64,000 nt of DNA from Mytilus californianus (taxonomy: Eukaryota), in assembly GCF_021869535.1 (NCBI RefSeq), contig NW_026262668.1, positions 16,244,001 through 16,308,000 on the forward strand, written 5' to 3'. This document shows, one piece after another, positions 44,401-61,500 of this stretch. Within the stretch, counting starts at the first letter, position 1, and each line of letters begins with the position of its first letter. The position numbers and the translations under genes were made by a program. The notes below the pieces were generated by a model. The model was not told the DNA's origin and searched no databases. It worked only from the letters and a program-made list of their open reading frames with translations.

Positions 44401-46647
44401 AATAACTATTATATTGTAGTGATACAAATCAGTATACACTGATTTGTTGTTATATATTATATTAAAATAACAGTTACATATATATATGATTTGCATCCGT
44501 TTGTATATCATTCTATTCTACTGTCAGTCTAATAATAGTGCAATGCAAGTGCATGGTGGACACTTTTCTGTAAAAATTCGATTTTTCTAAGATTGGATAC
44601 GAGTAGGCATTCATATTTTCCCGCAAAAACAATTACAGAGTTAACGGTCCTGTCGCAAAACGTTCTTTGAGATATTCTTCCGCATGCTTTAACACAATTT
44701 TTCGGTACGTGTGCATATATTATCAATGATTTTTTACTTATATATATATATCTAACTACAAAACATTTTCACATTATTAATTTATGTTGTAAACAAAAAT
44801 ATTTTTATCAGTATTCATTGAAGAGATTTTTTTATATCAAATGACAAGGAATGTTATTTTGCACTCGTTTATGTGCGCATATTTATCATGTTTATAGATC
44901 GGTTACAAACCAAAAACTAATTTACATAATGGAAATCTAGGCGATAGCAATACATCTGAGTGACCTCAAGGTCATCGCGATGTAAAAATTAAAACAACAT
45001 CTCTCCTCCAGTGACAAATTTTCATACCTCCCAGTTTTCAAAAAGTATCTTAGTGTATATAGTTATCATGGTTATGACGTCTGGTAGATCATTTCTAATG
45101 TTTTTATGTCAAAGAATTTTGAAGGCATCAAAGCAAAAAAATAAAAAATATATAACCTTACAAAAAGTTATTTGAAGACCTTATTGAACTTTTTTTTACC
45201 CTCTTGCTGCCTCTTATTCAATGTGGTTAAATTGCAGAGGCCAGGTCATGGCCAATGGCAATTAAGTGTCCGTGACGTCTCATGTCCAACTTTGATGTCA
45301 TTCAATATATATGATACCCCCCCCTGATGACATTCCATTTGAGACCCATTAAAAGAAAGATTACACTATATATTCTTTGCTGTTTTATTTGAAAGAGATT
45401 TAGTTATGAACAAGTGCTTGCATAAATTAAACATATGGACTCATGTGTCCCTCCGGCATAGATATGGCACAAAATGTGCACCAGAATAAAGTTATCTTGT
45501 TTTGTAATCTCCATAGATGCAATGGTTACATTGTCCACCTGTATTAGTTTGCTCCGGCAGACAGTGCGAACACACTTGTCCCTCTGCCTCTGGCAGCAAG
45601 AGGATTATGTAAAAATAAGGAGATGTGGTATGATTGCCAATGAGACAAATATCCACCAAAGTTCAAATGAAGTGGATGTAAGTAATTATAGGCAACCGTA
45701 CGGCGTTCAATAATGAGAAAAATCCATTTCTTAAATTCGGCTATGAAAGGCCCAGACATGAAAATATGTAACAATTTGTAAAATGTACAAAAAAATATTG
45801 ATGATCTTTTGACAATTTACTATACAGGTAGTTTTATTTTTACATAAATAAGTATTTGAATATTTGTTTTGTACGGACTTCGTCCTCTTTCACAGGTAAC
45901 ACCTGCTTTAGTCCAAATAATTATGACGTCTTGAAAGGCTATTTTAGTTTTTTTTCTGGGATGCCTTCCAAATAGCCTTTCAACAGTACCTCGAATGACC
46001 AAATAACACTTGTAATGACCGAATAACACTTGAAATTTTAATATTAGCACATATTGGTGACATTTAAACATTGATTATTAAATAATATTATATTATAAGT
46101 GTATTTTATAACTTAAAAATGATTTACAGAAAGTAGGTAAGTTCATAATTTGAAAAGATCATTATAAATATAGTGTGTACATCCAACATGGCGACCAAGG
46201 AAAACACAATGGGAAGAATAAAAGAATGATTGCATATGCATTCAAAGGGAAATGCTATGAAAATAAAGTATTAAATAATGTACTGTATATACAGAGTATT
46301 GTCCAATAATTGTTTTTCAGTAAGGTTTTGAAAAGTTAACAAGTACATCAAAGCCATGCAATTACTCCAATCACCTATTAGTTTTCTTAACGATTTACTC
46401 AATATTGAATGAAACGTAATTAAGAATTTTCACATATTTAATTTAAATTTAATCAAAAAATTGATTATACTTGATTGTTTTATAATAAAAACAAAGCAGC
46501 TAAATGGATGTTTCGTATGTGTGTTGTAATAACATTTTCTCAAAAAGAAATAAAAGATTTTCATTGGCAAATATAAATGTTTTTACAAGTAACTAAAATT
46601 TGGTATAAAAACCTGTGAAGACATATGTGCTGTCTTCCATTTTTAAA

Positions 46648-46852
46648 ATGGCTTTATAACTTGTGTTCAATGTGATGAAGAATGTGTTGATTGCACAATT
46701 CAGTGCAGTAGTTGTGATGGTTGGGTTTACAGTGCTTGTGTCCCAAAGAATGATTCAATGTTATCGGCCTGGTCAGATGTGTCTCTAAAGTTCCTATGTA
46801 AGGACTGCTGCTTTGCAGACATCAAGTACGACATGGCCAAGGCCCTAGAAAG
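46648..46852 (+). pseudogene. Decayed PHD-finger exon inside element A
   Basis: MA(frameshift)ITCVQCDEECVDCTIQCSSCDGWVYSACVPKNDSMLSAWSDVSLKFLCKDC...LER|gtaagt = C-x2-C-x10-C-x2-C-x4-Y-x2-C-x19-C-x2-C; the His ligand is replaced by Tyr; 1-nt frameshift after the ATG; not in the ORF track. Confidence 0.8.
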
Positions 46853-47864
46853 GTAAGTAATTTTATAAAGTATATTTTTAACATAATATTTATTAGAAGG
46901 TATATGAAATTTATAAAGAACAAATGTGAAATTGTACATATTTAATTTTAATGAAGACATTAATATCACTAATTCGATTATATTTAACTTATTTCTTATT
47001 TCATTTTCCTTGGCAATATATATTCAATTTATTTAATTTACTCAAAATTCAGAAATAAAAGTAAAGGAAAAAAAATTAATATTCTTAGATGCTTAGTATT
47101 GACGTTTAATTTTTTTTTTATTGCTATGTTCATCCATTTTAATACTTTAAATAAGTTTAATAATGAAATATTTTGTGAAAAGAAAAATAAACGAGAGAAC
47201 AACCACCTTCAAAAAGAAGAAGAACTGATTGTGTATTTAATACTATACATGCATTACAGTATTATTACAGCAGTGGGTAAATTGTGACTTGTTTTAAAAA
47301 AGTAAATTGTGTTATTTAATTGTATATTATTTTTACTGCACTTACTTTTTTTGTTCACTTCTTCTGTTTTATTGGTAAGTATATTGTATTGCTGATACTG
47401 TTTATTTGAATTGTGTTGAACTTTTTAACCATTGTATGTTTATAACTTACTTTTATTTGCTTTCTTCTTCTCTTTCATTGGTAAGTATATTGTATAATGA
47501 TTATGTATTGTTCATGCTGTTTATTTGTAGTGTGTATACTTTTTCAAATTGTTCATGCTTTTTGTTTGTATTGTGTATACTTTTCTATATTGTTCATGCT
47601 GTTTATTTTTATTGTGTATATTTTTTTGTTTTGTTTTACTGGTAAGTACATGTATACGTTCTAACCAATGTATGTTTATAATCTATTTTAATTGCTTTCT
47701 TCTAATGTTTAAGTAAGTATATTGTATTGTTTATGCAGTTTATTTGTATTGTGTTTAATGCATTTTTCTTTTACTGTTTCCCATTGCTGTTTTATAGACT
47801 GGATACATAATGCATGTATAGTATTGTTGTGCATGTTTTCAGGTACAACTGGAAGAAAATATTT

Positions 47865-48310: not shown

Positions 48311-51300
48311 GGGGGGGGGGGGGGGGGGGGTCGGACCTTTATCGGGACTCCGGGATTGTCCATTTTTAAGTTTGGGATTTCGGGAACGAGCAATATAATC
48401 ATCTGGATTTCAGGATTTAGTTTAATCGAGACACAGGATTTCATCCGGGAATTTGGGATTTTTATTTATCGGGACTCTTGTTTGAAGACCAAGAAAACAG
48501 TTAAAAATGATGAACAATGACAACAATGTGTATCAGTAATGACAGTGATGTCATTAATTTGGTTATGGTTAAGTGATCAATAATCCGTAATTAGTTCAAT
48601 AAAGATATCGATTTTGTTTTTTTAATTATTGATTGTCTTCTGGTAGCAGACGAAAAATGAATGATAATGATGATGGTGCAAAAAATGAAATCAAAATTAA
48701 GGGCATCATTGCCTATTACAATGAAACCACAACAATGCCATTCAGCAAGGAAAAAGTTAACATTTTTATAAAACCAGAAAACGCTACCAAATTTGAAAAC
48801 TTGACAGCATTCAAACAATTTATAGAAAGCTATTGTGGTATTAAAGAATCCGCCGTAGAGAAGGGATGAGGCAGTTTCACATTGAAATTGGCCAGACGGA
48901 CTAAAAACGCTGGTGTCTCTACCGAAACCTTCAGTATAAACACACAGCAACAGTGGCAGAATGAGCGCACAATGCTGCAACATTATGATACATCTTCTTT
49001 ATTAGGTAACAGCCTAAATAAAAGCTCTTACCATTATCAAACATTTAATAAGCAAGAGGGGGTACTGGGACTGGGAATTTTCAAATCAATTTTATGTCCA
49101 TGTATGTCCCTACACATAAAAAATATAATTTAATTCTGAATATATTCAAGAAAAAAAATCTGCTAGAATTAATCAAAATCATGGGAAACTAAATGGAGAA
49201 TGTGTCTATGGGCCACAGATGCCCCCGCTTGTAAAAACACTTGAGTAACCTTCCACATACAGATGCAGAATTCACATTATTTAGACTGTATTGTAATTAT
49301 AAGCATATGTTTCATAACATTTGGTGATCTTTGGTTGAGGCAAACTAAAGTTGGAGAACGGAAATAAAATTGAGAATGGAAATGGGGAATATGTCAAAGA
49401 GACAACAACCCGACCAAAGAGCAGATAACCAGCACAAGGTCACCAATTGGTCTTCAAGACAGCGAGAAAATCCCCGGCAACCGGAGTCGGGCTTCAGCTG
49501 GCCCCTAAATAAAAATGTGTACTAGTTCAGTGAAAATGGATGTCAAGCTAAACTCCAAAACAGATGAAAACATATAAATGAACTTAAATTGAAAAACGTA
49601 CAAGACTAAAAAAAGGCCAGAGGCTCCTGACTTAGGACAGGCGCAAAAATGCGGCAGGGTTAAACATGTTTTGTGACTTTGTGAGATCTCAACCCTCCCC
49701 TATATCTCTAGCCAACGTAGAATAAATGTGTGAGACAGAGGACGGTGCGAAAAGAAACCACTATGCCATTGAATTTGTATTCGGATAAGAACTATGAAGG
49801 GGAGCACTCTTGTGTCCAATTGGCAGCAAAAGGAGGAGAACGTTTCAAATGACCAGAGAGTGGATGAAGAATATGATACAGATGATGAAACGGAGGATGG
49901 AGATGATGAGGAGGATAATGGTTTTGTCGATAATCATGACAACACAGAAGTTGCAAAGGAACTCCGATTTATTGTAAATCGTGGGGTGTCGAGATCTGGA
50001 CAGAACTTAAAATTATCATGTCGTTTAACAAACTTTTCATCGCTATGAAAATTAAACTACCCCGGTACTCACTACTGTAAGAGAATCAGTGTTGAAATGA
50101 TATCGGACTTGTTTTCATAATATCTCATACTGGTTTGATACCACTTTCGGATTGACTTTGTTAAACATCACGACGAGTGCCATTAAAGGAGCAGGGACTG
50201 CTTACAAAAATCTAGAGAATCATCATGTATTCCTTGTTATATAAGATAGGAGTTTTGTGTTCTTCAGGGTATATGGTTTGCTGTATTCTTTGATTTGTTC
50301 ATATTTGTTTGTCCATGTTCCCGGGTTTTCATGTGGAGCAGAAACTGCTTACCCTTCCGGAGCACCTGGGTTTACTTCTATTTTGTTTAGGAGTTTGAGT
50401 GGTCCATGTTTCTTAATGTTCGGTGTTCTGTGTTGTGATTGTTCCTGTTGTACCTGCGTTAAATTTTTTCGCAGCGCTTTTTGATTAAAAAATAGTAAAC
50501 CCGAGGACACGATTACACAGAAACAAAACAGGATTAAACAAGGCGCGTCAGCACTGCAGCATAAGATTAGTATTCAAACTAGCCGATTTATTTTAATCAT
50601 TGTGACAGTGTCTTCTAAGTTTTTGAATGTCACCTGGGACTATTATACTAAGGGGACTGGAAACTGATCGATCTGTTGAGATTTCATTGCCCCGATAGCG
50701 GATTACTGATTTTTTGTTTTGATTGACAGCTTATTGTGTAAACTAGCATTCCGTACATGAATGTAAACAATAGATTTCGGCAAACAAGTCAGCATATATA
50801 TAATACTGTTAAAATTGGTGGATTTGAATAAAAAAATAATTATCAAATTAATTAGTGTAAATTCAAAATATATATATTGTTTACGAAAAATTATTAATAA
50901 GTAGTCAATATATTAGTGTTGAAAATAAACCAGATATAGTCGGTATGCCAGCGCTTTACTTGACTGCTAAGAAAACAATGTGTCAAAGGTTAACAGATCA
51001 TGATTAATCCTAAAAACAATAAGTGTGCAATAAAATCAATGTTTACAATTTCAGTTCATAATTTATTCATATACATTTTTTGTAACAAAAGTTACCGGGG
51101 TCTCATAAAGATATAGCATCATTGTTTTGAACTTTTGTGAACTTCGTGTTTACACCAAAATTTCAACATGGCTGTGAACGGGCCTACTTTTGTAGTTCTA
51201 ATTATGGAACCTAGTGTACATATTTTCACAAAGTCATATTCTAATGCCACCAGAAGACCATTACTAAGCAAAATTAACCCTGATTATAATCAAAATATTG

Positions 51301-52144
51301 CACACATAAAAAGAAGTAGGTAATTTTATAGGAACAGTATAATTTATTTGAGCCGTGCATGTGGGTTCCGGTTGTAATGAGAAAGAGATTTATATTCCAC
51401 TTTTTATTTTAAAAAGTGACAATAAAAATAGGCAAATCCAAACTATAACCTTTAAATATGATTTTACAACAAACCGAACTTGCGTATCTCTTTTCAATCA
51501 ACAGTTATAAGAAATTTTATGAATCATATACTTTTTTCCACATCGTCCCCACGCTAATTTCATCCTGAAAATTTCAATCTTCATGTGTCATTTTTTACAC
51601 TTACACTTAAGACAGGATTTGGTGATTAATAACAACTGTCAAAGATCTTTTATCATTATAGTAATCATGTTTATATTAAGGATTATCATTTCGAATAACT
51701 ATAAAATAACAAAACAAATTACCGAAATTTTAAGATCAAGGCACGCTGTCACTGTCAAAACAATATGGCGTATCGATAAACAGCGCAGGTAAAGTCTCGT
51801 TCTAACGACCGTGATGTTGATATTATTACACTGATTGGTGTAACAGTTTCCAGTCCCGTTAGTATAATAGTCCCAGATGTCACAGTCTCCACATATATCA
51901 TTTGTTTTAAACTAGACTCACTAGATTATATTAATAAGATACAGGAAATCTGCACAACAAACTGACTGATTGCTTTGAACAGTATACAATCATTCATTAA
52001 TGTATTTTGTCAAAAAAGCATGTTATTTTATCGGGATTTCAGGATATTGTCAAATAAGACCCAGGAAATCGGGATTAAGCAAAAATAAACTCAGGATTTC
52101 AGGATTGGACCCCCTCCGACCCCCCCCCCCCCCCCCCCCCCCCC
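48311..52144. mobile_element. Element B: 3.8-kb TIR element with G-tract/C-tract termini and a degenerate 9-bp TSD (Mutator-like)
   Basis: G20-TCGGA start and TCCGA-C-tract end; subterminal (c/g)ggattt repeats; flanks ATTTATTAT (48302-48310) and TTCTATTAT (52145-52153); the empty site ATTTATAAT-gatc is preserved in the left arm of element A. Confidence 0.75.
48657..49005 (+). pseudogene. Interrupted reading frame of unknown family inside element B
   Basis: ORFs 48633-48869 and 48882-49133 are in the same frame, separated by one TGA (48867-48869); candidate donor at 49006; acidic remnant at 49794-50048. Confidence 0.5.
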
Positions 52145-52203
52145 TTCTATTATGATCTTTATGAACTTACCTGCTTTCTGTAAATCATTTTCAAGTTATA
52201 AAA

Positions 52204-52375
52204 TACACCTTATCGCTAATCCCGCTTGACCCGTGAATCAGTCCCGCTCGAACTTTTGACGTCATACAACGATCACTTTTCCATTGTGGCGTCAGATATT
52301 TTCTATTATGACGTCAAAATTTTACGGGAACTTGTGTGATGTCAAGTAATGGCGGACAAATAGCGATAAGGTGTA
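52204..52375. mobile_element. MITE with 15-bp perfect TIRs (tacaccttatcgcta) inserted in the right arm of element A
   Basis: Absent from the left arm; consistent with a 2-bp duplication. Confidence 0.85.
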
Positions 52376-54945
52376 TACACTTATAATATAATATTATTTA
52401 ATAATCAATGTTTAAATGTCACCAATATGTGCTAATATTAAAATTTCAAGTGTTATTCGGTCATTACAAGTGTTATTTGGTCATTCGTGTTACAATGTAC
52501 CCGCCTTTCAAGACGTCATAATTATTTGGACTACACCTTCCTCATATTTAAAATTATTTGGACTAGCTCCTTAAGACGTCATGATTAAATTGACTGCAGA
52601 ATGTCAGAACTCATTCCCTCGATCTACGTAAAATTTAAAATCTTACGCTTAGTAATTTTAAATTGTTTCACCTGTGAATGTATGTTGTTTTGCTCCCAAA
52701 AACCCGGAAATCTAATGTAGATTATATAATTAGGAAATCACATGAAAGGGGAGCGGAATTACGGTAGACTCTACGTATCACTAGCCTAGGGTAGTATGAA
52801 TATTTATGAGTTTTATGAAGCAACGCGGGATACGAGATCACGTCATTGGCGCGATTATCTAATTTCACAGAACTATCAGCAAGCGGAAAACAAAAATATG
52901 TTCAGAAGTTCTTAGATATTTCCCAAGATGTAGGGCATATATCACTGGAACAGAGACGATACCAAAATAAGATTTTTGAATACTGAATCAGCTTTAGATA
53001 TTGTGCACAAACACGGCATCTAGGCACTCAAAAGACGATTATTAAAAGGGGGGAGTTACACGCAACGAATGCATACGAGGGCTACCCTATGTGTTACATA
53101 TGAAAACATACAGAAGAGCTATATTAAACCAGCGACAGTAACAGATCCAAATTTTCATAAGGAAAGGGGGGGGGGGAGTGGGGCTGCTCCAGTCAATGGC
53201 ATAGGGACTTCAGTCTTGACTACGGGTCAAATATATGTAATACATTATAGCGTGTCAATCGTCTACATGCATTTAAAAAAACGTATGCCCCTACTGTAGA
53301 CGATTTATTGGCTATATATCTGATCTGTAGTCCAGTCCCTATATATGCTCCAGTCATGCCTGGGTGATTCCCTATATATCCACCAATTTTCCCTACAAGA
53401 GGGGGGTCCAATGCACCCTGCTCACCTCCTAAATCAGTGTTTGAGAGACACATATTCACTTGTATATATGTCTCAGAATAAACCAATGTAAAACCAAACC
53501 TTAGCCTAACTCAATTACTGATTAGACCAATAATTATGATGTCTTGAAAGGCTATTTTATTTTTTTTGGTCATAATTATCTGGACTACTGCTATGATCCC
53601 ATCATTAACATATGGTCGAAGAAGGTGGGGCTAGGGTGTTTGTTTCATCTTGCACACAGTTACAGGGTTTGGTACAGACATCTGGCTGTTGTTGTAAACC
53701 AGACACCCAATTCATATACATTTATTGTACATGTATTTTTGTTTGCAAGAATCTGTACATATATACCCGTTGTTCATATAAATTTCAGAAGAAAATCATT
53801 ACCCATTGATCCATAAATATATATTTTCCAAGCTATCATAAATATAAACTATGACATCTTTAGATGTAACTAAAAACCTGGGTTCTTTCATATTATTGAA
53901 CAAAAACATCAGTACACAATTTTACAGACATCTAAGATTATCATAACATTTAAACATGCTATCTGGTTATTAACTTTAACTGATTTTATAAATTTTTTGT
54001 AGTAATCCTTGCATTCTGTTTATTTTTAAAGGAATGCATTGACCATACAAAGGAATATATGTTTGTTTGCCCTTACCCTACCTACATGTACTCAAAACAT
54101 AGCTGCCTACCCAAATTCTTTTATTGTTCTGATGTGAAAAAGTTTTCTTTTAATCTGATAGGCATGAAGACTAAAACACATCTGACACTTCAATTTCCCT
54201 TTGCTGTGAGAAAAAAGAAGATGCCTACCAACCTACCCACTGTCTCTAAAATGTACTTTTGGGTAGGGTAAGGGCTAACTGAAATATTTATAAGTGTAGC
54301 CTTACAAATGTGACATCAAAATTTATCAGTGTAAAAATTATTTCAGGTTTAAATAGTCTTCTTGAAAACTTGGACATAATGACGTAAAAATCTGCTAAGA
54401 GGTGTGCAAATTGAGCAGGGGATGCCCCACAAACCTTTTCTGTTAGTTAACATTTACAGTGTCCAGTTATGTACCCCTTTAAGTTTATTCTGTCCTTTTA
54501 AATTTGTGAATAAAGGAAGTATCTTTATTAATAATTTATATATATATATGCTCTTATTATGTTCAAAACAACCTGATTACTTTTTGTTTAGTTCTAAGTA
54601 AAAACTAGGAGTAAGGGAATTTTCTGCTAAGGGAATTTAGACATTTTTTTAAAAATTTCAACCTAAGATCAAATATATAAATTTCACTTGTCCACTTAAT
54701 CATGTTAATATGAAAAACTAAAGTGCAAGGAGTATTTATTTATCTACATTTCTTGTTTCAGCAATTGCTGTACCTTTCCAGTTACTTATTATGTGTTGTG
54801 TATTAATTTGACTATAACACTTTTGAGTGACTGGATAGGTTGATAATATTCATCAATTGAAAAAGAAACTGGAGAGATTGGTAATAGTTTTAGACAGCGG
54901 CAATTGAAGGTACACAAATTTAGGTTGTCATATCAGCCTACAAAG

Positions 54946-56160
54946 TCATATCAATAGCCCAGGCTAGTGGTCAATAAGCATGAGTCATCAGACATCAGTC
55001 ATATCAATGGCCTAGGGTAGTGGTCAGTTATCAGGAGTGATCAGTCAACAGTCCTATCAATAGCCTAGGGTAGTGGTCAGTTATCTGGAATGACCAGTTT
55101 ACAAAGTTTACAAACTCATATCACTAGCCTAGGGTAGTGGTCATTTATCTTGAATAACCAAGTAACAAATTCATATCACTAGCCTAGGGTAGTGGTCAAT
55201 TATCTTGAATGACCAGTTAACAAAGCCATATTACTAGCCTAGGGTAGTGTTCAATTATCAGGAGTGATCAGTTTACAAAGTCATATCACTAGCCTAGGGT
55301 AGTGGTCAATTATCTGGAATGACCAGTTAACAAAGTCATATCACTAGCCTAGGGTAGTGGTCAGATATCTGGAATGACCAGTTAACAAAGTCATACCACT
55401 AGCCTAGCATAATAGTCAATTATCTGGAATGACCAGCTAACAAAGTCATATCACTAGCCTAGGGTAGTGGTCAATTATCTGGAATGACCAGTTAACAAAG
55501 TCATATCACTAGCCTAGGGTAATGGTCAATTATCTGGAATGACCAGTTAACAAAGTCATATCACTAGCCTAGGGTAGTGGTCAATTATCTGGAATGACCA
55601 GTTAACAAAGTCATATCACTATCCTAGGGTAGTGGTCAATTATCTGGGATCACCAGTTAACAAAGTCATATCACGAGCCTAGGGTAGTGGTCAATTATCT
55701 TGAATGACCAGTTAACAAAGTCATATCACTAGCCTAGGGTAGTGGTCAATTATCTTGAATGACCAGTTAACGAAGCCATGTCACTAGCCTAGGGTAGTGG
55801 TCAATTATCTGGAATCACCAGTTAACAAAGTCATATCACGAGTCTAGGGTAGTGGTCAATTATCTGGAATCACCAGTTAACAAAGTCATATCACGAGCCT
55901 AGGGTAGTGGTCAATTATCCGGAATGACCAGTTAACAAAGTCATATCACTAGCCTAGGGTAGTGGTCAATTATCTTGAATGACCAGTTAACGAAGGCATG
56001 TCACTAGCCTAGGGTAGTGGTCAATTATCAGGAGTGATCAGTTTACAAAGTCATATCACTAGCCTAGGGTAGTGGTCAATTATCTGGAATGACCAGTTAA
56101 CAAAGTCATATCACTAGCCTAGGGTAGTGGTCAGATATCTGGAATGACCAGTTAACAAAG
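54946..56160 (+). repeat. 55-bp satellite (about 22 units), left foldback arm
   Basis: Unit gtcatatcactagcctagggtagtggtcaattatctggaatgaccagttaacaaa; period 55445 to 55500. Confidence 0.95.
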
Positions 56161-57225
56161 AGAGTTAATGAGACATTACTGACAACCACCCTAGGCTAGT
56201 GATATCACCCATATATGACAACCACCTTAAGTTAGTGATACGAGACATTAATGACAACTACACTAGGCTAGTGATATGAGACATTAACGACAACTACCAT
56301 AGGCTAGTGATATGAGACATTAATGACAACTACCTTAGGAGATGAAATGATACGTTACTGACAACTACAAAAAGCTAGTGATATGACACATAACTGACAA
56401 CTACCCTAGGATGGTGATATCACATAATTATAATTGACAACTACTCAAGGGTAGTGATATGACACATAACTGAAAAGTACTCTAGGCTAGTCAGTGATAT
56501 GAAATAAGTGACAAATTCACTAGGCTAGTGATATAACACACTACTGACAACTACCGTAAGCTAGTGATGACAAAATACTGATAACTACCCTACTGTCCCT
56601 AGGCTAGTGATATAACTTTGTTGTTTTATAATGACAAGTAACGGACAACTACCAGGATAATGATTATATGACACACTACTGACAACTACTCGAGTAGTGA
56701 TATGACAAATTACTGACAACTCCCCTAGGCTAGTTATATGACACATTACTGACAACTACCTTAGGCTAGTGATATATCTGTTGTTTTATAATGACTCATA
56801 ACTAAAAACTACCCTGAGCTAGTGACATTACACATAACTGACAACTACCCTAGGCTAGTGATATAACTTTGTTGTTTTATGACACATAGCTGACAACTAT
56901 CGTAGGTTAGTGATATGACACATAACTGACAACTACCATATGCTAGTGATATAAAACATAACTGAAAACTATTCAAGGCTAGTGATATGACACATAACTG
57001 ACAACTACCATAGGCTAGTGATATGACACATAACTGACAACTATTCAAGGCTAGTGATATGACACATAAATGACAACTACCATAGGCTAGTGATATGACA
57101 CATAACTGATAACTATTCAAGGCTAGTGATATGACACATAAATGACAACTACCCTAGGCTAGTGATCTTACACATAATTGGTAACTACCATAGGCTATTG
57201 TTATGACATTGTTGAATGATCCGAT
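56161..57225 (-). repeat. 36-bp satellite forming the unpaired centre of the foldback
   Basis: Unit gacacataactgacaactaccataggctagtgatat; shares the core with the 55-mer in right-arm orientation; gives the 12-aa repeat ORF 56845-57120. Confidence 0.9.
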
Positions 57226-58515
57226 ACTACCCTATACTAGTGATATGGCTTTGTAAACTGGTCATTCCAGATAATTGACTACTACCCTAGGCTAGTGATA
57301 TGATTTTGTTAACTGGTTATTCCAGATAATTGACCACTACCCTAGGCTAGTGATATGACTTTGTTAACTGGTCATTCAAGATAATTGACCACTACCCTAG
57401 GCTAGTGATATGGCTTTGTTAACTGGTCATTCCAGATAATTGACTATTACCCTAGGCTAGTGATATGGCTTTGTTAACTGGACATTCCAGATAGTTGACC
57501 ACTACCCTAGGCTAGTGATATGACTTTGTTAACTGGTCATTCCAGATAATTGACTATTACCCTAGGCTGGTGATATGTCTCTGTTAACTGATCACTCCTA
57601 AAAAAATTGACCACTACCCTAGGCTAGTGATATGACTTTGTTAACTGGTCATTCCAGATAATTGACCACTACCCTAGGCTAGTGATATGACTTTGTAAAC
57701 TGATCAGTCCTGATAATTGACCACTACCCTAGGCTAGTGATATGAATTTGTTAACTGGTCATTTAAATAATTGACCACTACCCTAGGCTAGTGATATGGC
57801 TTTGTTAACTGGTCATTCCAGATATAATTGACTATTACCCTAGGCTGGTGATATGTCTCCGTTAACTGATCACTCCTAAAAATTGATCACTACCCTAGGC
57901 TAGTGATATGTCTCTGTTAACTGATCACTCCTAATAATTGACCACTACCCTAGGCTAGTGATATGTCTCTGTTAACTGATCACTCCTGATAATTAACCAC
58001 TACTCTAGGTTAGTGATATGGATTTGTTAACTTAACTGATCTGATAAATGACCACTACCCTATACTAGTGGTATGGCTTTGTTAACTGGTCATTCAAGAT
58101 AATTGACTACTACCCTAGGCTAGTGATGTGACTTTGTTAACTGATCACTCCTGATAATTAACCACTACTCTAGGCTAGTGATATAGATTTGTTAACCTAA
58201 CTGATCTGATAAATGACCACTACCCTATACTAGTGGTATGGCTTTGTTAACTGGTCATTCAAGATAATTGACTACTACCCTAGGCTAGTGATATGACTTT
58301 GTTAACTGGTCATTCCAGATAATTGACTACTACCCTAGGCTAGTGATTTGGCTTTGTTAACTGGTCATTCCAGATAACTGACCACTACCCTAGGCTATTG
58401 ATAGGACTGTTGACTGATCACTCCTGATAATTGACCACTACCCTAGGCCATTGATATGACTGATGTCTGATGACTCATACTTATTGACAACTAGCCTGGG
58501 CTATTGATATGACTT
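57226..58515 (-). repeat. 55-bp satellite (about 23 units), right foldback arm
   Basis: Reverse complement of the left-arm unit. Confidence 0.95.
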
Positions 58516-61500
58516 TGTAGGCTGATATGACAACCTAAATTTGTGTACCTTCAATTGCAGCTGTCTAAAACTATGACCAATCTCTCCAGTTTCTTTTTCG
58601 ATTGATGAATATTATCAACCTATCCAGTCACTCAAAAGTGTTATAGTCAAATTAATACACAACACATAATAAGTAACTGGAAAGGTACAGCAATTGCTGA
58701 AACAAGAAATGTAGATAAATAAATACTCCTTGCACTTTAGTTTTTCATATTAACATGATTAAGTGGACAAGTGAAATTTATATATTTGATCTTAGGTTGA
58801 AATTTTAAAAAAAATGTCTAAATTCCCTTACTCCTAGTTTTTACTTAGAACTAAACAAAAAGTAATCAGGTTGTTTTGAACATAATAAGAGCATATATAT
58901 ATATAAATTATTAATAAAGATACTTCCTTTATTCACAAATTTAAAAAGGACAGAATAAACTTAAAGGGGTACATAACTGGACACTGTAAATGTTAACTAA
59001 CAGAAAGGGTTTGTGGGGCATCACCTGCTCAATTTGCACACCTCTTTGCAGATTTTTACGTCATTATGTCCAAGTTTTCAAGAAGACTTATTAAACCTGA
59101 AATAATTTTTACACTGATAAATTTTGATGTCACATTTGTAAGGCTACACTTATATTTTAGTTAGCCCTTACCCTACCCAAAAGTACATTTTAGAGACAGT
59201 GTGTAGGTTGTAAGGCTTTTTCTTTTTTCTCACAGCAAAGGGAAATTGAAGTGTCAGATGTTTTTCAGTCTTCATGCCTATCAGATTAAAAGAAAACTGT
59301 TTCACATCAGAACAATAAAAGAATTTGGGTAGGCAGCTATGTTTTGAGTACATGTAGGTAGGGTTAGGGCAAACAAACATATATTCTTTTGTATGGTCAA
59401 TGCATTCCTTTAAAAATAAACAGAATGCAAGGATTACTACAAAAAATTTATAAAATCAGTTAAAGTTAATAACCAGATAGCATGTTTAAATGTTATGATA
59501 ATCTTAGATGTCTGTAAAATTGTGTACTGATGTTTTTGTTCAATAATATGAAAGAACCCAGGTTTTTAGTTACATCTAAAGATGTCATAGTTTATATTTA
59601 TGATAGCTTGGAAAATATATATTTATGGATCAATGGGTAATGATTTTCTTCTGAAATTTATATGAACAACGGGTATATATATGTACAGATTCTTGCAAAC
59701 AAAAATACATGTACAATAAATGTATATGATTGGGGTGTCTGGTTTACAACAACAGCCAGATGTCTGTACCAAACCCTGTAACTGTGTGCAAGATGAAACA
59801 AACACCCTAGCCCCACCCCCTTCGACCATATGTTAATGATGGGATCATAGGTAGCAGTAGTCCAGATAATTATGACAAAAAAAAAAAAAAAATAGCATTT
59901 CAAGACATCATAATTATTGGTCTAATCAGTAATTGAGTTAGGCTAAGGTTTGGTTTTACATTGGTTTATTCTGAGACATATATACAAGTGAATATGTGTC
60001 TCTCAAACACTGATTTAGGGGGTGGGCAGGGTGCATTGGACCCCCCTCTTGTAGGGAAAATTGGTGGATATATAGGGCATCACCCAGGCATGACTGGAGC
60101 ATATATAGGGACTGGACTACAGATCAGATATATAGCCAATAAATCGTCTACAGTAGGGGCATACGTTTTTTTAAATGCATGTAGACGATTGACACGCTAT
60201 AATGTATTACATATATTTGACCCGTAGTCAAGACTGAAGTCCCTATGCCATTGACTGGAGCAGCCCCACTCCCCCCCCTTCCTTATGAAAATTTGGATCT
60301 GTTACTGTCGCTGGTTTAATATAGCTCTTCTGTATGTTTTCATATGTAACACATAGGGTAGCCCTCGTATGCATTCGTTGCGTGTAACTCCCCCCTTTTA
60401 ATAATCGTCTTTTGAGTGCCTAGATGCCGTGTTTGTGCACAATATCTAAAGCTGATTCAGTATTCAAAAAACTTATTTTGGTATCGTCTCTGTTCCAGTG
60501 ATATATGCCCTACATCTTGGGAAATATCTAAGAACTTCTGAACATATTTTTGTTTTCCGCTTGCTGATAGTTCTGTGAAATTAGATAATCGCGCCAATGA
60601 CGTGATCCCGTATCCCGCGTTGCTTCATAAAACTCATGAATATTCATACTACCCTAGGCTAGTGATACGTAGAGTCTACCCGGAATTACGCAGTGTCGTC
60701 TAATTTTGGAAATATCTACGTTCAGGGCTGCCTAAATTAAAGAAGTCATTTTTCTGATCGTAATACATGATACTTCCCAATGACCTTTATTTGTAGGGAT
60801 TCGGTCTACAGGGGGATCTGATGAGGCACATTTGTACTTGGATTTATAATGCATTGGTGCAGGAACATATATATGACTGGAGCGGGCCCCCTCTTAAGCA
60901 GTCAGACTGAGAGGGCCCCCTCTTATGAAAATTTCTGGGTCCGACACTGGCAAAAGGTAGTTAAAGCATTTTGTAGTCTGGGGAAAAAAAGTATTTAAAA
61001 GAAAAGGTAGTTAACACATTTATTAGTAACCAACACTTTCAACTTTAGCTTCAAAGAATTAATTAATTTCATCAGAGACATATATACACGTGTATATATG
61101 TCTCTGATTTCATTATTTGAATAAATTATGATTTTTTAAAATGAATATAATATCAAAAGTTGTAACACAGATATTCCAAATCTTTTTACAAAAATCCGCA
61201 TGTGTTTATCTTTTGAAAGAAAAAAGTTAAATATGTATATCCAAAGATAGAAATGTCCAAGAAACCAAAATTTTAGGTAGACCGTATATGTCTAAAATTT
61301 CGACCCCATTTATCTCTAAATTTAGCACACGAAAGGTATATTTTTTATTACACATTTGAATTGACCAAGTGAAAAATAGCTTGTATGCAAATTTTTCGTA
61401 AAAAAATCACAGTGGGATCAAAACTGTTTCGTATGCCCTTAATGTCAATTAAGTGTACTTTTCGGTGCTTTGATTCTATGAATTTGTAGTGTAACTCAAA

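What the first reader, a model, noticed from the sequence alone, without database searches (positions are those of the whole stretch)
52754..60689. Young 7.9-kb foldback transposon with 3.4-kb inverted arms and a perfect 9-bp TSD
Seen: the arms are near-identical over about 3.4 kb, differing by scattered SNPs and small indels such as a 15-bp duplication near 54620 present only on the left. They flank a 1.07-kb loop, start with GG, and are bounded by an exact CGGAATTAC duplication. No transposase is present. Established: 9-bp TSDs with long modular TIRs characterise Foldback/Mutator elements; Merlin elements also have GG termini and 8-9 bp TSDs. Inference: a recent non-autonomous insertion able to extrude a cruciform or, if transcribed, give kilobases of dsRNA; probably presence/absence polymorphic.
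Basis: partly seen in the sequence, partly recalled or inferred. Interest (0 to 1): 0.8.

Follow-up and report, generated by a model that had tools for sequence, protein, structure and literature searches.

The report
Foldback transposon copy in mussel genome
This is a real 7.9-kb jumping gene of the long-known "foldback" kind with no enzyme of its own, one of about two dozen copies in what looks like the California mussel genome. It is a tidy example and the first I could find for a bivalve, but not a new kind of element.

Summary
Window 52763-60680 is an inverted-repeat element flanked by an exact 9-bp duplication, CGGAATTAC. Two details need correcting.

- **Arm identity:** only the outer 2.2 kb of each arm is near-identical (98.5%). 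The inner 1.1-1.3 kb are 55-bp tandem arrays that match at about 84-90%.
- **The "1.07-kb loop":** it is not a loop. It is a 36-bp array belonging to the right arm, and its left-arm counterpart has been lost.

The genome holds 47-48 such ends, forming 17 pairs 0.5-38 kb apart. Nine of ten testable pairs have perfect 9-bp duplications with unrelated sequences. That rules out an assembly artefact or a plain inverted duplication.

A 20-bp block next to each end recurs in every 55-bp and 36-bp unit and is probably the transposase-binding site.

No copy I could read encodes a protein. No partner transposase could be tied to the ends, so Mutator/Foldback membership rests on the 9-bp duplication and the architecture.

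In the youngest subfamily, two arm types 1.7% apart are each copied at 99.7-99.95% identity. Arm similarity is therefore no age clock.

Contigs from two individuals stop exactly where an empty allele would, which suggests but does not prove polymorphism. One RNA run shows no transcription.

The scan had noted this same stretch before, and similar satellite-armed Mutator elements elsewhere in this genome.

The parts
52754..52762 (.). left target-site duplication CGGAATTAC
52763..52798 (+). left terminus. It starts GGTAGACTCTACG, which holds the small palindrome GTAGA-C-TCTAC. The 20-bp block TATCACTAGCCTAGGGTAGT follows and recurs in all subrepeats.
   Evidence: There are 47 such termini genome-wide. 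The 20-mer occurs 1447 times in the genome and 0 times in the control.
52763..54939 (+). left arm, outer non-repetitive domain (about 2.2 kb), non-coding
   Evidence: 98.47% identical to the right outer domain. No Pfam match.
54940..56160 (+). left arm, 55-bp tandem array (about 19-22 units, with a 165-bp higher-order period), core motif in forward orientation
56168..57208 (-). 36-bp tandem array (interrupted; a shortened derivative of the 55-bp unit) in right-arm orientation only.
57226..58518 (-). right arm, 55-bp tandem array (23.5 units), core motif in reverse orientation
58519..60680 (-). right arm, outer non-repetitive domain, ending in the terminus (60645-60680)
60681..60689 (.). right target-site duplication CGGAATTAC

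Best explanation
Window 52763-60680 is one insertion of a low-copy family of non-autonomous foldback-type cut-and-paste DNA transposons. The family has about 24 copies and 47-48 ends. The genome matches the published Mytilus californianus assembly in size and in its largest scaffold.

Shown:
- Family members have identical ends and 9-bp target duplications.
- The canonical layout is outer arm (2.2 kb), 55-bp array, 36-bp array, then the mirror image, with almost no loop.
- Array lengths vary hugely, so copies range from 0.5 to 38 kb.
- The window copy has lost the left 36-bp array.
- The family has moved very recently. Copies on different chromosomes differ by 0.05-0.3% and have different target duplications.

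Inferred:
- A DDE transposase supplied in trans binds the 20-bp near-palindromic block, which sits 13 bp from each end and once in every subrepeat. It cuts at the GG ends and inserts with a 9-bp staggered cut.
- The arrays are amplified binding sites. They grow and shrink by unequal exchange or replication slippage.
- The 9-bp duplication and the modular arms point to the Mutator superfamily (Foldback/Phantom-like) at about 60-65%. Merlin is the main alternative.
- The element has no evident host function.
For: - **Ends and duplication:**
- **Arm anatomy:**
- **Family size:** 40 arm matches, 38 ends with the 32-mer, 47 with the 20-mer against 2 in the control, and 48 candidates with 90 bp.
- **Target duplications:** 9 of 10 testable pairs have perfect 9-bp duplications, all with different sequences.
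- **Motif:** it occurs only inside the element in this window, genome-wide 1447 times against 0 in the control, and is shared by the terminus and by the 55-bp and 36-bp units.
- **Recent movement:** arm types A and B are 99.7-99.95% identical between copies on contigs C1, C110, C165 and C24.
- **No coding capacity:**
- **Possible trans sources:** Mutator-type transposases are abundant and often intact in this genome (at least 465 PF10551 candidates; at least 1503 PF20700 candidates).
- **Published parallels:** Tm1 (PMC3169594) and Tetris (PMC4079207) have the same layout, 8-10-bp duplications, and a terminal sequence reused in the subrepeats. For Tetris, too, no autonomous copy has been found.
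- **Species:** total size and largest scaffold (C1, 142,435,203 bases) match PMC9710001.
Against: - No transposase gene shares these ends. None of the listed PF10551, PF20700 or PF12762 hits lies inside or beside any of the 17 paired copies. Only 150 of 465 and 114 of 1503 candidates were scored.
- A 9-bp duplication with GG ends also fits Merlin, and IS1595-type DDE remnants exist here (65 candidates).
- Binding of a transposase to the 20-mer is inference only.
- The foldback arrangement at this particular locus was not checked with spanning long reads. The public contigs laid were only a few hundred bases long.
Confidence: 0.85

Rival explanations
1. A non-autonomous element of the Merlin superfamily (IS1595-like DDE transposase) that has grown foldback arms.
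For: 65 candidate PF12762 DDE matches exist in this genome, some with open frames up to 515 aa.
Against: - Merlin elements are short (mean 1.6 kb) and rare in bivalves (PMC10294476).
- No PF12762 hit lies in or next to a copy.
- All 9 scorable duplications are exactly 9 bp.
- Published foldback families with 9-bp duplications belong to Mutator (PMC3169594, PMC4079207).
- About a quarter of the ends start GA, not GG.
Confidence: 0.1
2. An assembly artefact: a false palindrome made by the assembler or by chimeric long reads.
For: Long palindromes are a known failure mode. No spanning read was examined here, and the contigs laid were short.
Against: - The same architecture stands at 17 loci on 10 contigs, each with its own flanks and its own 9-bp duplication.
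- The two arms differ by 33 substitutions and 7 indels, and their arrays differ in length.
- The assembly is HiFi-based (PMC9710001).
- The arms are present in independent runs of other individuals.
Confidence: 0.02
3. A one-off inverted segmental duplication, or a satellite carried by a Helitron or Helentron (the common satellite carrier in bivalves), and not a TIR transposon.
For: Bivalve satellites are often carried by Helentrons (PMC7492417, listed). The interior is mostly tandem repeats.
Against: - The terminal inverted repeats are perfect and the 9-bp duplications are exact at many loci.
- Helitrons and Helentrons have neither feature.
- A one-off duplication would not recur 17 times with new flanks.
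Confidence: 0.01
4. A Galileo-like foldback of the P superfamily.
For: Galileo has long, internally repetitive arms with extra transposase-binding sites (cited in PMC4079207).
Against: P-superfamily elements are known to make 7-8-bp duplications (7 bp for Galileo). Here the duplications are 9 bp in 9 of 9 scorable pairs.
Confidence: 0.02

Closest known systems
Tetris (foldback transposon of Drosophila virilis; PMC4079207)
   Same: - Each arm has an outer flanking domain followed by tandem repeats.
- A short stretch of the flanking domain is reused in the repeat unit.
- Duplications are 8-10 bp and copies have no ORFs.
- No autonomous copy has been found.
- Repeat arrays also occur away from recognisable ends. 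Here that is seen at C99:47.13, 52.67 and 114.49 Mb and at C88:21.90 Mb.
   Different: - The units are 55 and 36 bp, not 220 bp.
- The outer domain is 2.2 kb, against 0.87 kb or less.
- There is no sequence similarity, and the host is a bivalve.
- More structurally complete copies exist (17 against 3).
Drosophila FB and the nematode Tm1 Mutator/Foldback family (PMC3169594)
   Same: - Composite arms of variable length are built of short tandem repeats.
- Target duplications are 9 bp with no target consensus.
- Most copies are non-coding.
- The arms of one copy are not identical (Tm1 mean 93%).
   Different: - Tm1 has coding members with a Phantom-type Mutator transposase, and none is known here.
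- Tm1 elements are 1-2.6 kb with 14-bp repeats.
- The mussel copies reach 38 kb.
Giant satellite-armed Mutator transposon of the same genome (earlier scan note s1-282001; unchecked)
   Same: Same genome. Reported as foldback-like with satellite arms, clean ends and recent activity.
   Different: - It is reported as 49 kb with a 20-exon OTU-fused transposase.
- No pair of the present ends lies 49 kb apart.
- No further ends turned up at 90-bp blastn sensitivity.
- So it does not share these termini, and whether it supplies the transposase is untested.

Membership tests
Foldback-type elements (structural class) | Long terminal inverted repeats that make up most or all of the element | tested here: met
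   The arms are 3.4 kb (left) and 4.5 kb (right) of 7.9 kb, with no unique loop.
Foldback-type elements (structural class) | Arms are modular, with tandem subrepeats whose number varies between arms and between copies | tested here: met
   There are 55-bp and 36-bp arrays. Each arm holds 18 to about 137 55-bp units, and copies range from 0.53 to 38 kb.
Foldback-type elements (structural class) | Most copies lack coding capacity | tested here: met
   No ORF over 132 aa was found in the 8 copies read in full. There were no transposase domains; the only hit was a stray half PHD exon in foreign DNA nested in the 38-kb copy.
Mutator superfamily (Foldback / Phantom-like MULEs) | 9-bp (8-10) target-site duplication | tested here: met
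   9 of 10 testable pairs have perfect 9-bp duplications. The tenth pairing is ambiguous because a third terminus lies nearby.
Mutator superfamily (Foldback / Phantom-like MULEs) | Mobilised by a MULE DDE transposase (PF10551 / PF20700) carried by an autonomous element with the same ends | tested here: inconclusive
   Such transposases are abundant (at least 465 and at least 1503 candidates). None of those listed lies within or beside a copy. Only part of the candidates were scored, and 9 paired copies were not read.
Merlin superfamily | 8-9-bp duplication and GG termini | tested here: met
   The duplication is 9 bp. About three quarters of the ends start GG and most of the rest GA. These features do not separate Merlin from Mutator.
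Merlin superfamily | IS1595/IS1016-like DDE transposase partner | tested here: inconclusive
   There are 65 PF12762 candidates in the genome, none in or beside a copy.
P superfamily foldbacks (Galileo) | 7-bp target-site duplication | tested here: not met
   The duplications are 9 bp throughout.
Helitron/Helentron satellite carriers of bivalves | No terminal inverted repeats and no target duplication | tested here: not met
   The terminal inverted repeats are perfect over 32 bp or more, and the duplications are 9 bp.

The most novel reading that the evidence does not exclude
The family may be active now and shared almost unchanged between mussel species.

- Contigs of a second species ('organism C') match the arms at about 98.4%, while its contigs on the neighbouring flank differ by 8-10%.
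- Within this genome, copies differ by as little as 0.05%.
- No autonomous partner shares the ends.

Together this would fit a recent horizontal transfer or introgression of a purely non-coding foldback. Such an element would be driven in trans by a transposase that recognises only the 20-bp near-palindromic block, for instance one of the satellite-armed giant Mutator elements of this genome.
Probability: 0.15. Interest if true: 0.55.

Novelty: new member of a known kind. Interest (0 to 1): 0.3.

Why it matters
Foldback elements are classic drivers of inversions, deletions and new satellite DNA. I found no paper describing one in Mytilus or any other bivalve: the five papers that hold both 'foldback' and 'Mytilus' only mention foldback in passing or in their reference lists.

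This family offers several things.
- It is a clean, low-copy and very recently mobile example in a genome known for high heterozygosity.
- Its two distinguishable arm types show directly that arm divergence is inherited from the source element and cannot be used to date insertions.
- Its 55-bp and 36-bp arrays, which change several-fold between copies that are otherwise 99.9% identical, show a satellite being born inside a transposon.

It does not change what is known about how such elements work.

Tried and rejected
**Coding capacity**
- I looked for a coding copy among the long family members. Seven long copies (11.7-38 kb) were fetched and compared with the window copy. Their extra length is almost all array.
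- The 20 kb of foreign DNA in the 38-kb copy gave only a half PHD-finger exon among 97 open frames of 55 aa or more.

**Partner transposase**
- Lists of PF10551, PF20700 and PF12762 hits were cross-checked by coordinate against all 17 paired copies and the solo ends. None coincided.
- Ten MULE loci that were cut out carry no copy of the core motif.
- Looser searches for more distant ends (20-mer with 2 mismatches; 90-bp blastn at E up to 1) found nothing beyond the same 47-48 ends.

**Limits reached**

**Empty allele**
- I looked for an empty-site haplotig inside the assembly. The left flank is single copy, and the right flank is single copy over its first 190 bases or so.

**Transcription**
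- Reads of one RNA run gave essentially zero depth over arms and arrays, except in bins that overlap high-copy repeats.

**Readings rejected**
- Arm identity as an age estimate was rejected.
- The artefact, segmental-duplication, Helitron and P/Galileo readings were rejected (see the rival explanations).
Full report
**1. The observation**

Both ends of the element read GGTAGACTCTACGTATCACTAGCCTAGGGTAG. They abut an exact CGGAATTAC at 52754-52762 and at 60681-60689. The element proper is therefore 52763-60680, or 7918 bp.

A whole-arm alignment runs 52763-56159 against 60680-57305 at 93.9% over 3415 columns. That figure hides two regimes.
- **Outer domain.** The outer, non-repetitive 2.2 kb has 33 mismatches in 2159 columns (98.47%) and 7 small indels. 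One of these is a left-only 16-bp insertion at 54612-54627, an 11-bp tandem duplication plus 5 filler bases.
- **Inner domain.** This is a 55-bp tandem array. The left array has about 19-22 units (54940/55105-56160) and the right has 23.5 units (57226-58518). The two arrays match at only about 84-90%, in any of many registers.

Its unit is a shortened 55-bp unit, and all its units point the same way as the right arm.

The element has no ORF above 91 aa, and its ORFs match no Pfam family. The window contains no N.

**2. It is a family, not an accident**

The first 400 bp of the arm finds 40 places in the window's own genome at 92-100% identity.
- The terminal 32-mer with up to 2 mismatches finds 38 places.
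- The terminal 20-mer finds 47 places (24 forward, 23 reverse) against 2 for the control.
- A 90-bp blastn at E up to 1 finds no more than 48 candidates.

The ends form 17 convergent pairs, 0.53 to 38.2 kb apart, on contigs C1, C24, C88, C99, C110, C132, C143, C154 and C165, plus about 11 solo ends.

Both flanks were in hand for ten pairs. Nine of them have a perfect 9-bp duplication, each with a different sequence and with no consensus: CGGAATTAC, GTCATTTAC, GTAAAACAT, CGACTTGGC, CCTGCAGGT, GCGCCGGTC, GTTAAAGTT, TTCTGTTAC and GAAAAAGCA. The tenth, on C165 near 81.98 Mb, has a third terminus close by, so its pairing is ambiguous.

This disposes of an assembly artefact and of a one-off inverted duplication.

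**3. Architecture**

I mapped the core motif and its spacing in eight copies read in full. The canonical layout is: outer arm, forward 55-bp array, forward 36-bp array, reverse 36-bp array, reverse 55-bp array, outer arm. That is a nearly complete palindrome with little or no loop.
- The number of 55-bp units per arm runs from 18 to about 137, and this accounts for almost all size differences.
- The window copy lacks the forward 36-bp array, so its arms are 3.4 and 4.5 kb.
- The 38-kb copy has the same 9-bp duplication on both sides but carries about 25 kb of foreign repeats.

A 20-bp block, TATCACTAGCCTAGGGTAGT, lies 13 bp from each end and once in every 55-bp and 36-bp unit.
- Its 16-bp core is a near-palindrome.
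- It occurs 1447 times in the genome against 0 for the control.
- In this window it occurs only inside the element.
- The outermost 13 bp hold a small palindrome, GTAGA-C-TCTAC, read directly from the sequence.

**4. Age and activity**

I aligned and treed about 1.85 kb of arm from 28 ends.
- In one subfamily (copies on C1, C110, C165 and C24) there are two arm types. Within a copy they are about 98.3% alike.
- Each type is 99.7-99.95% identical between copies that sit on different chromosomes and have different target duplications.
- So the difference between arms was already present in the source element and was copied with it. Arm identity is not a clock, and the family moved very recently.
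- The two arms of the window copy are each other's nearest relatives (98.37%). The next copy is at 98.31%, so this copy has no close sibling.
- Its age is bounded only loosely. Its arm divergence of about 1.5% is below the 2.73% heterozygosity reported for the species (PMC9710001).

**5. Polymorphism and transcription**

I laid one stretch (50263-56262) against three DNA runs, kept as short contigs, and one RNA run.

In two DNA runs from different studies of 'organism A', the only contig covering 52561-52763 behaves as an empty allele would.
- It carries three substitutions (52634, 52639, 52658).
- It stops exactly at 52763 and then runs on for 223 and 20 letters that do not fit the arm.
- 52763 is the duplication plus one G. 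An empty allele would align exactly that far, because the right flank also begins with G.
- The left flank is single copy in the assembly, and so are the first 190 bases or so of the right flank, so these contigs are allelic.

The tails' letters were not shown, so this is suggestive and not proof. No empty-site haplotig exists in the assembly.

The RNA run had about 6% of its reads read. It gave zero depth over nearly all of the arms and arrays, so there is no support for long dsRNA in that sample.

**6. Transposase partner**

No copy that I could read codes for anything. Earlier scan notes say that Mutator transposase genes in this genome can have 20 exons. I therefore also scanned 97 open frames of 55 aa or more from the foreign DNA of the 38-kb copy. 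Only a half PHD-finger exon turned up.

The genome holds many candidate transposases.
- There are at least 465 PF10551 candidates and at least 1503 PF20700 (Mutator) candidates. Many of the PF20700 matches have intact open frames of about 700 aa.
- There are 65 PF12762 (Merlin-type) candidates.
- None of the listed hits falls inside or next to a family member.
- Only part of the candidates were scored.

**7. Comparison with known elements**

The layout, the 9-bp duplication, the reuse of a terminal block in the subrepeats and the missing autonomous copy all match published foldback families.
- **Tetris of Drosophila virilis** (PMC4079207).
- **Tm1 of root-knot nematodes** (PMC3169594). Its coding members place it in the Phantom branch of Mutator.
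- **Galileo-type foldbacks** of the P superfamily are excluded by the length of the duplication.
- **Merlin** is not excluded by any test here. It is less likely because Merlin elements are short and rare in bivalves (PMC10294476).

I rate Mutator/Foldback membership at about 60-65% and the structural class 'foldback element' as met.

I found no paper describing a foldback element in Mytilus or other bivalves.

**8. Host genome**

The genome has 1.65 Gb in 175 contigs, and contig C1 has 142,435,203 bases. This matches the published Mytilus californianus assembly: 1.65 Gb, 176 scaffolds, largest 142.4 Mb, built from HiFi plus Omni-C (PMC9710001). It also agrees with earlier scan notes.

**9. 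Verdict**

This is a real, well-formed, non-autonomous foldback transposon. It is a new member of a known kind.

- the corrected anatomy, with no loop and arrays that are not near-identical;
- the family census with its target duplications;
- the demonstration that arm divergence is inherited;
- the hint of an empty allele;
- the hint that a second mussel species carries nearly the same arms.

Noticed in passing
G000:C2:27387332-27459949 and G000:C99:49332600-49387117 (outside the window): Intact PF20700 Mutator-type transposase frames (702 and 680 aa open) stand head to tail in long arrays. One has at least 19 units with a period of 4050 bp (some 3581 bp). The other has at least 13 units with a period of about 4450 bp. 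A transposase gene amplified as a tandem repeat is unusual.
   Followed up: no
window 52794-55031 against 51083-51519, in run X10 ('organism C'): Contigs of a second species match the foldback arms at about 98.4% (26 differences in 1615 bases) at depth 1500-2200. Its contigs on the nearby flank differ by 8-10% at depth about 65-70. This could mean a shared young family or a horizontal transfer, but the flank piece may itself be a repeat.
   Followed up: partly
window 50652-51857: A 1.2-kb element with 14-bp inverted ends (GGGACTGGAAACTG) sits inside another small palindromic repeat. Contigs of all three DNA runs skip it, so it is probably another insertion polymorphism or a repeat-family effect.
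   Followed up: partly
L045-L048 (G000:C154:19002688-19040934); PHD piece at L047:5170-5406:+: This 38-kb family member has matching 9-bp duplications but carries about 25 kb of foreign repeats. These include other satellites, an inner inverted pair and half a PHD-finger exon. The exon may be like the PHD exon that another reader noted at window 46648-46854.
   Followed up: partly
window 52063-52662 and 50263-50462: Very high-copy repeats lie just left of the insertion, with contig depth 100-1000 times that of their neighbours, and RNA reads lie on them. Part of 52159-52493 recurs at 45986-46148.
   Followed up: no
G000:C99:47129299-47130553, C99:52670573-52671286, C99:114486295-114489313, C99:23026991-23027650, C88:21902283-21903325: The 55-bp satellite also occurs at loci where no family terminus was found. 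These may be free arrays, as reported for Tetris, or elements with other ends.
   Followed up: no
L006 (G000:C88:89063866-89064395): A 530-bp miniature family member has both ends and a perfect 9-bp duplication (GTAAAACAT). This shows that the arrays are dispensable for insertion.
   Followed up: partly
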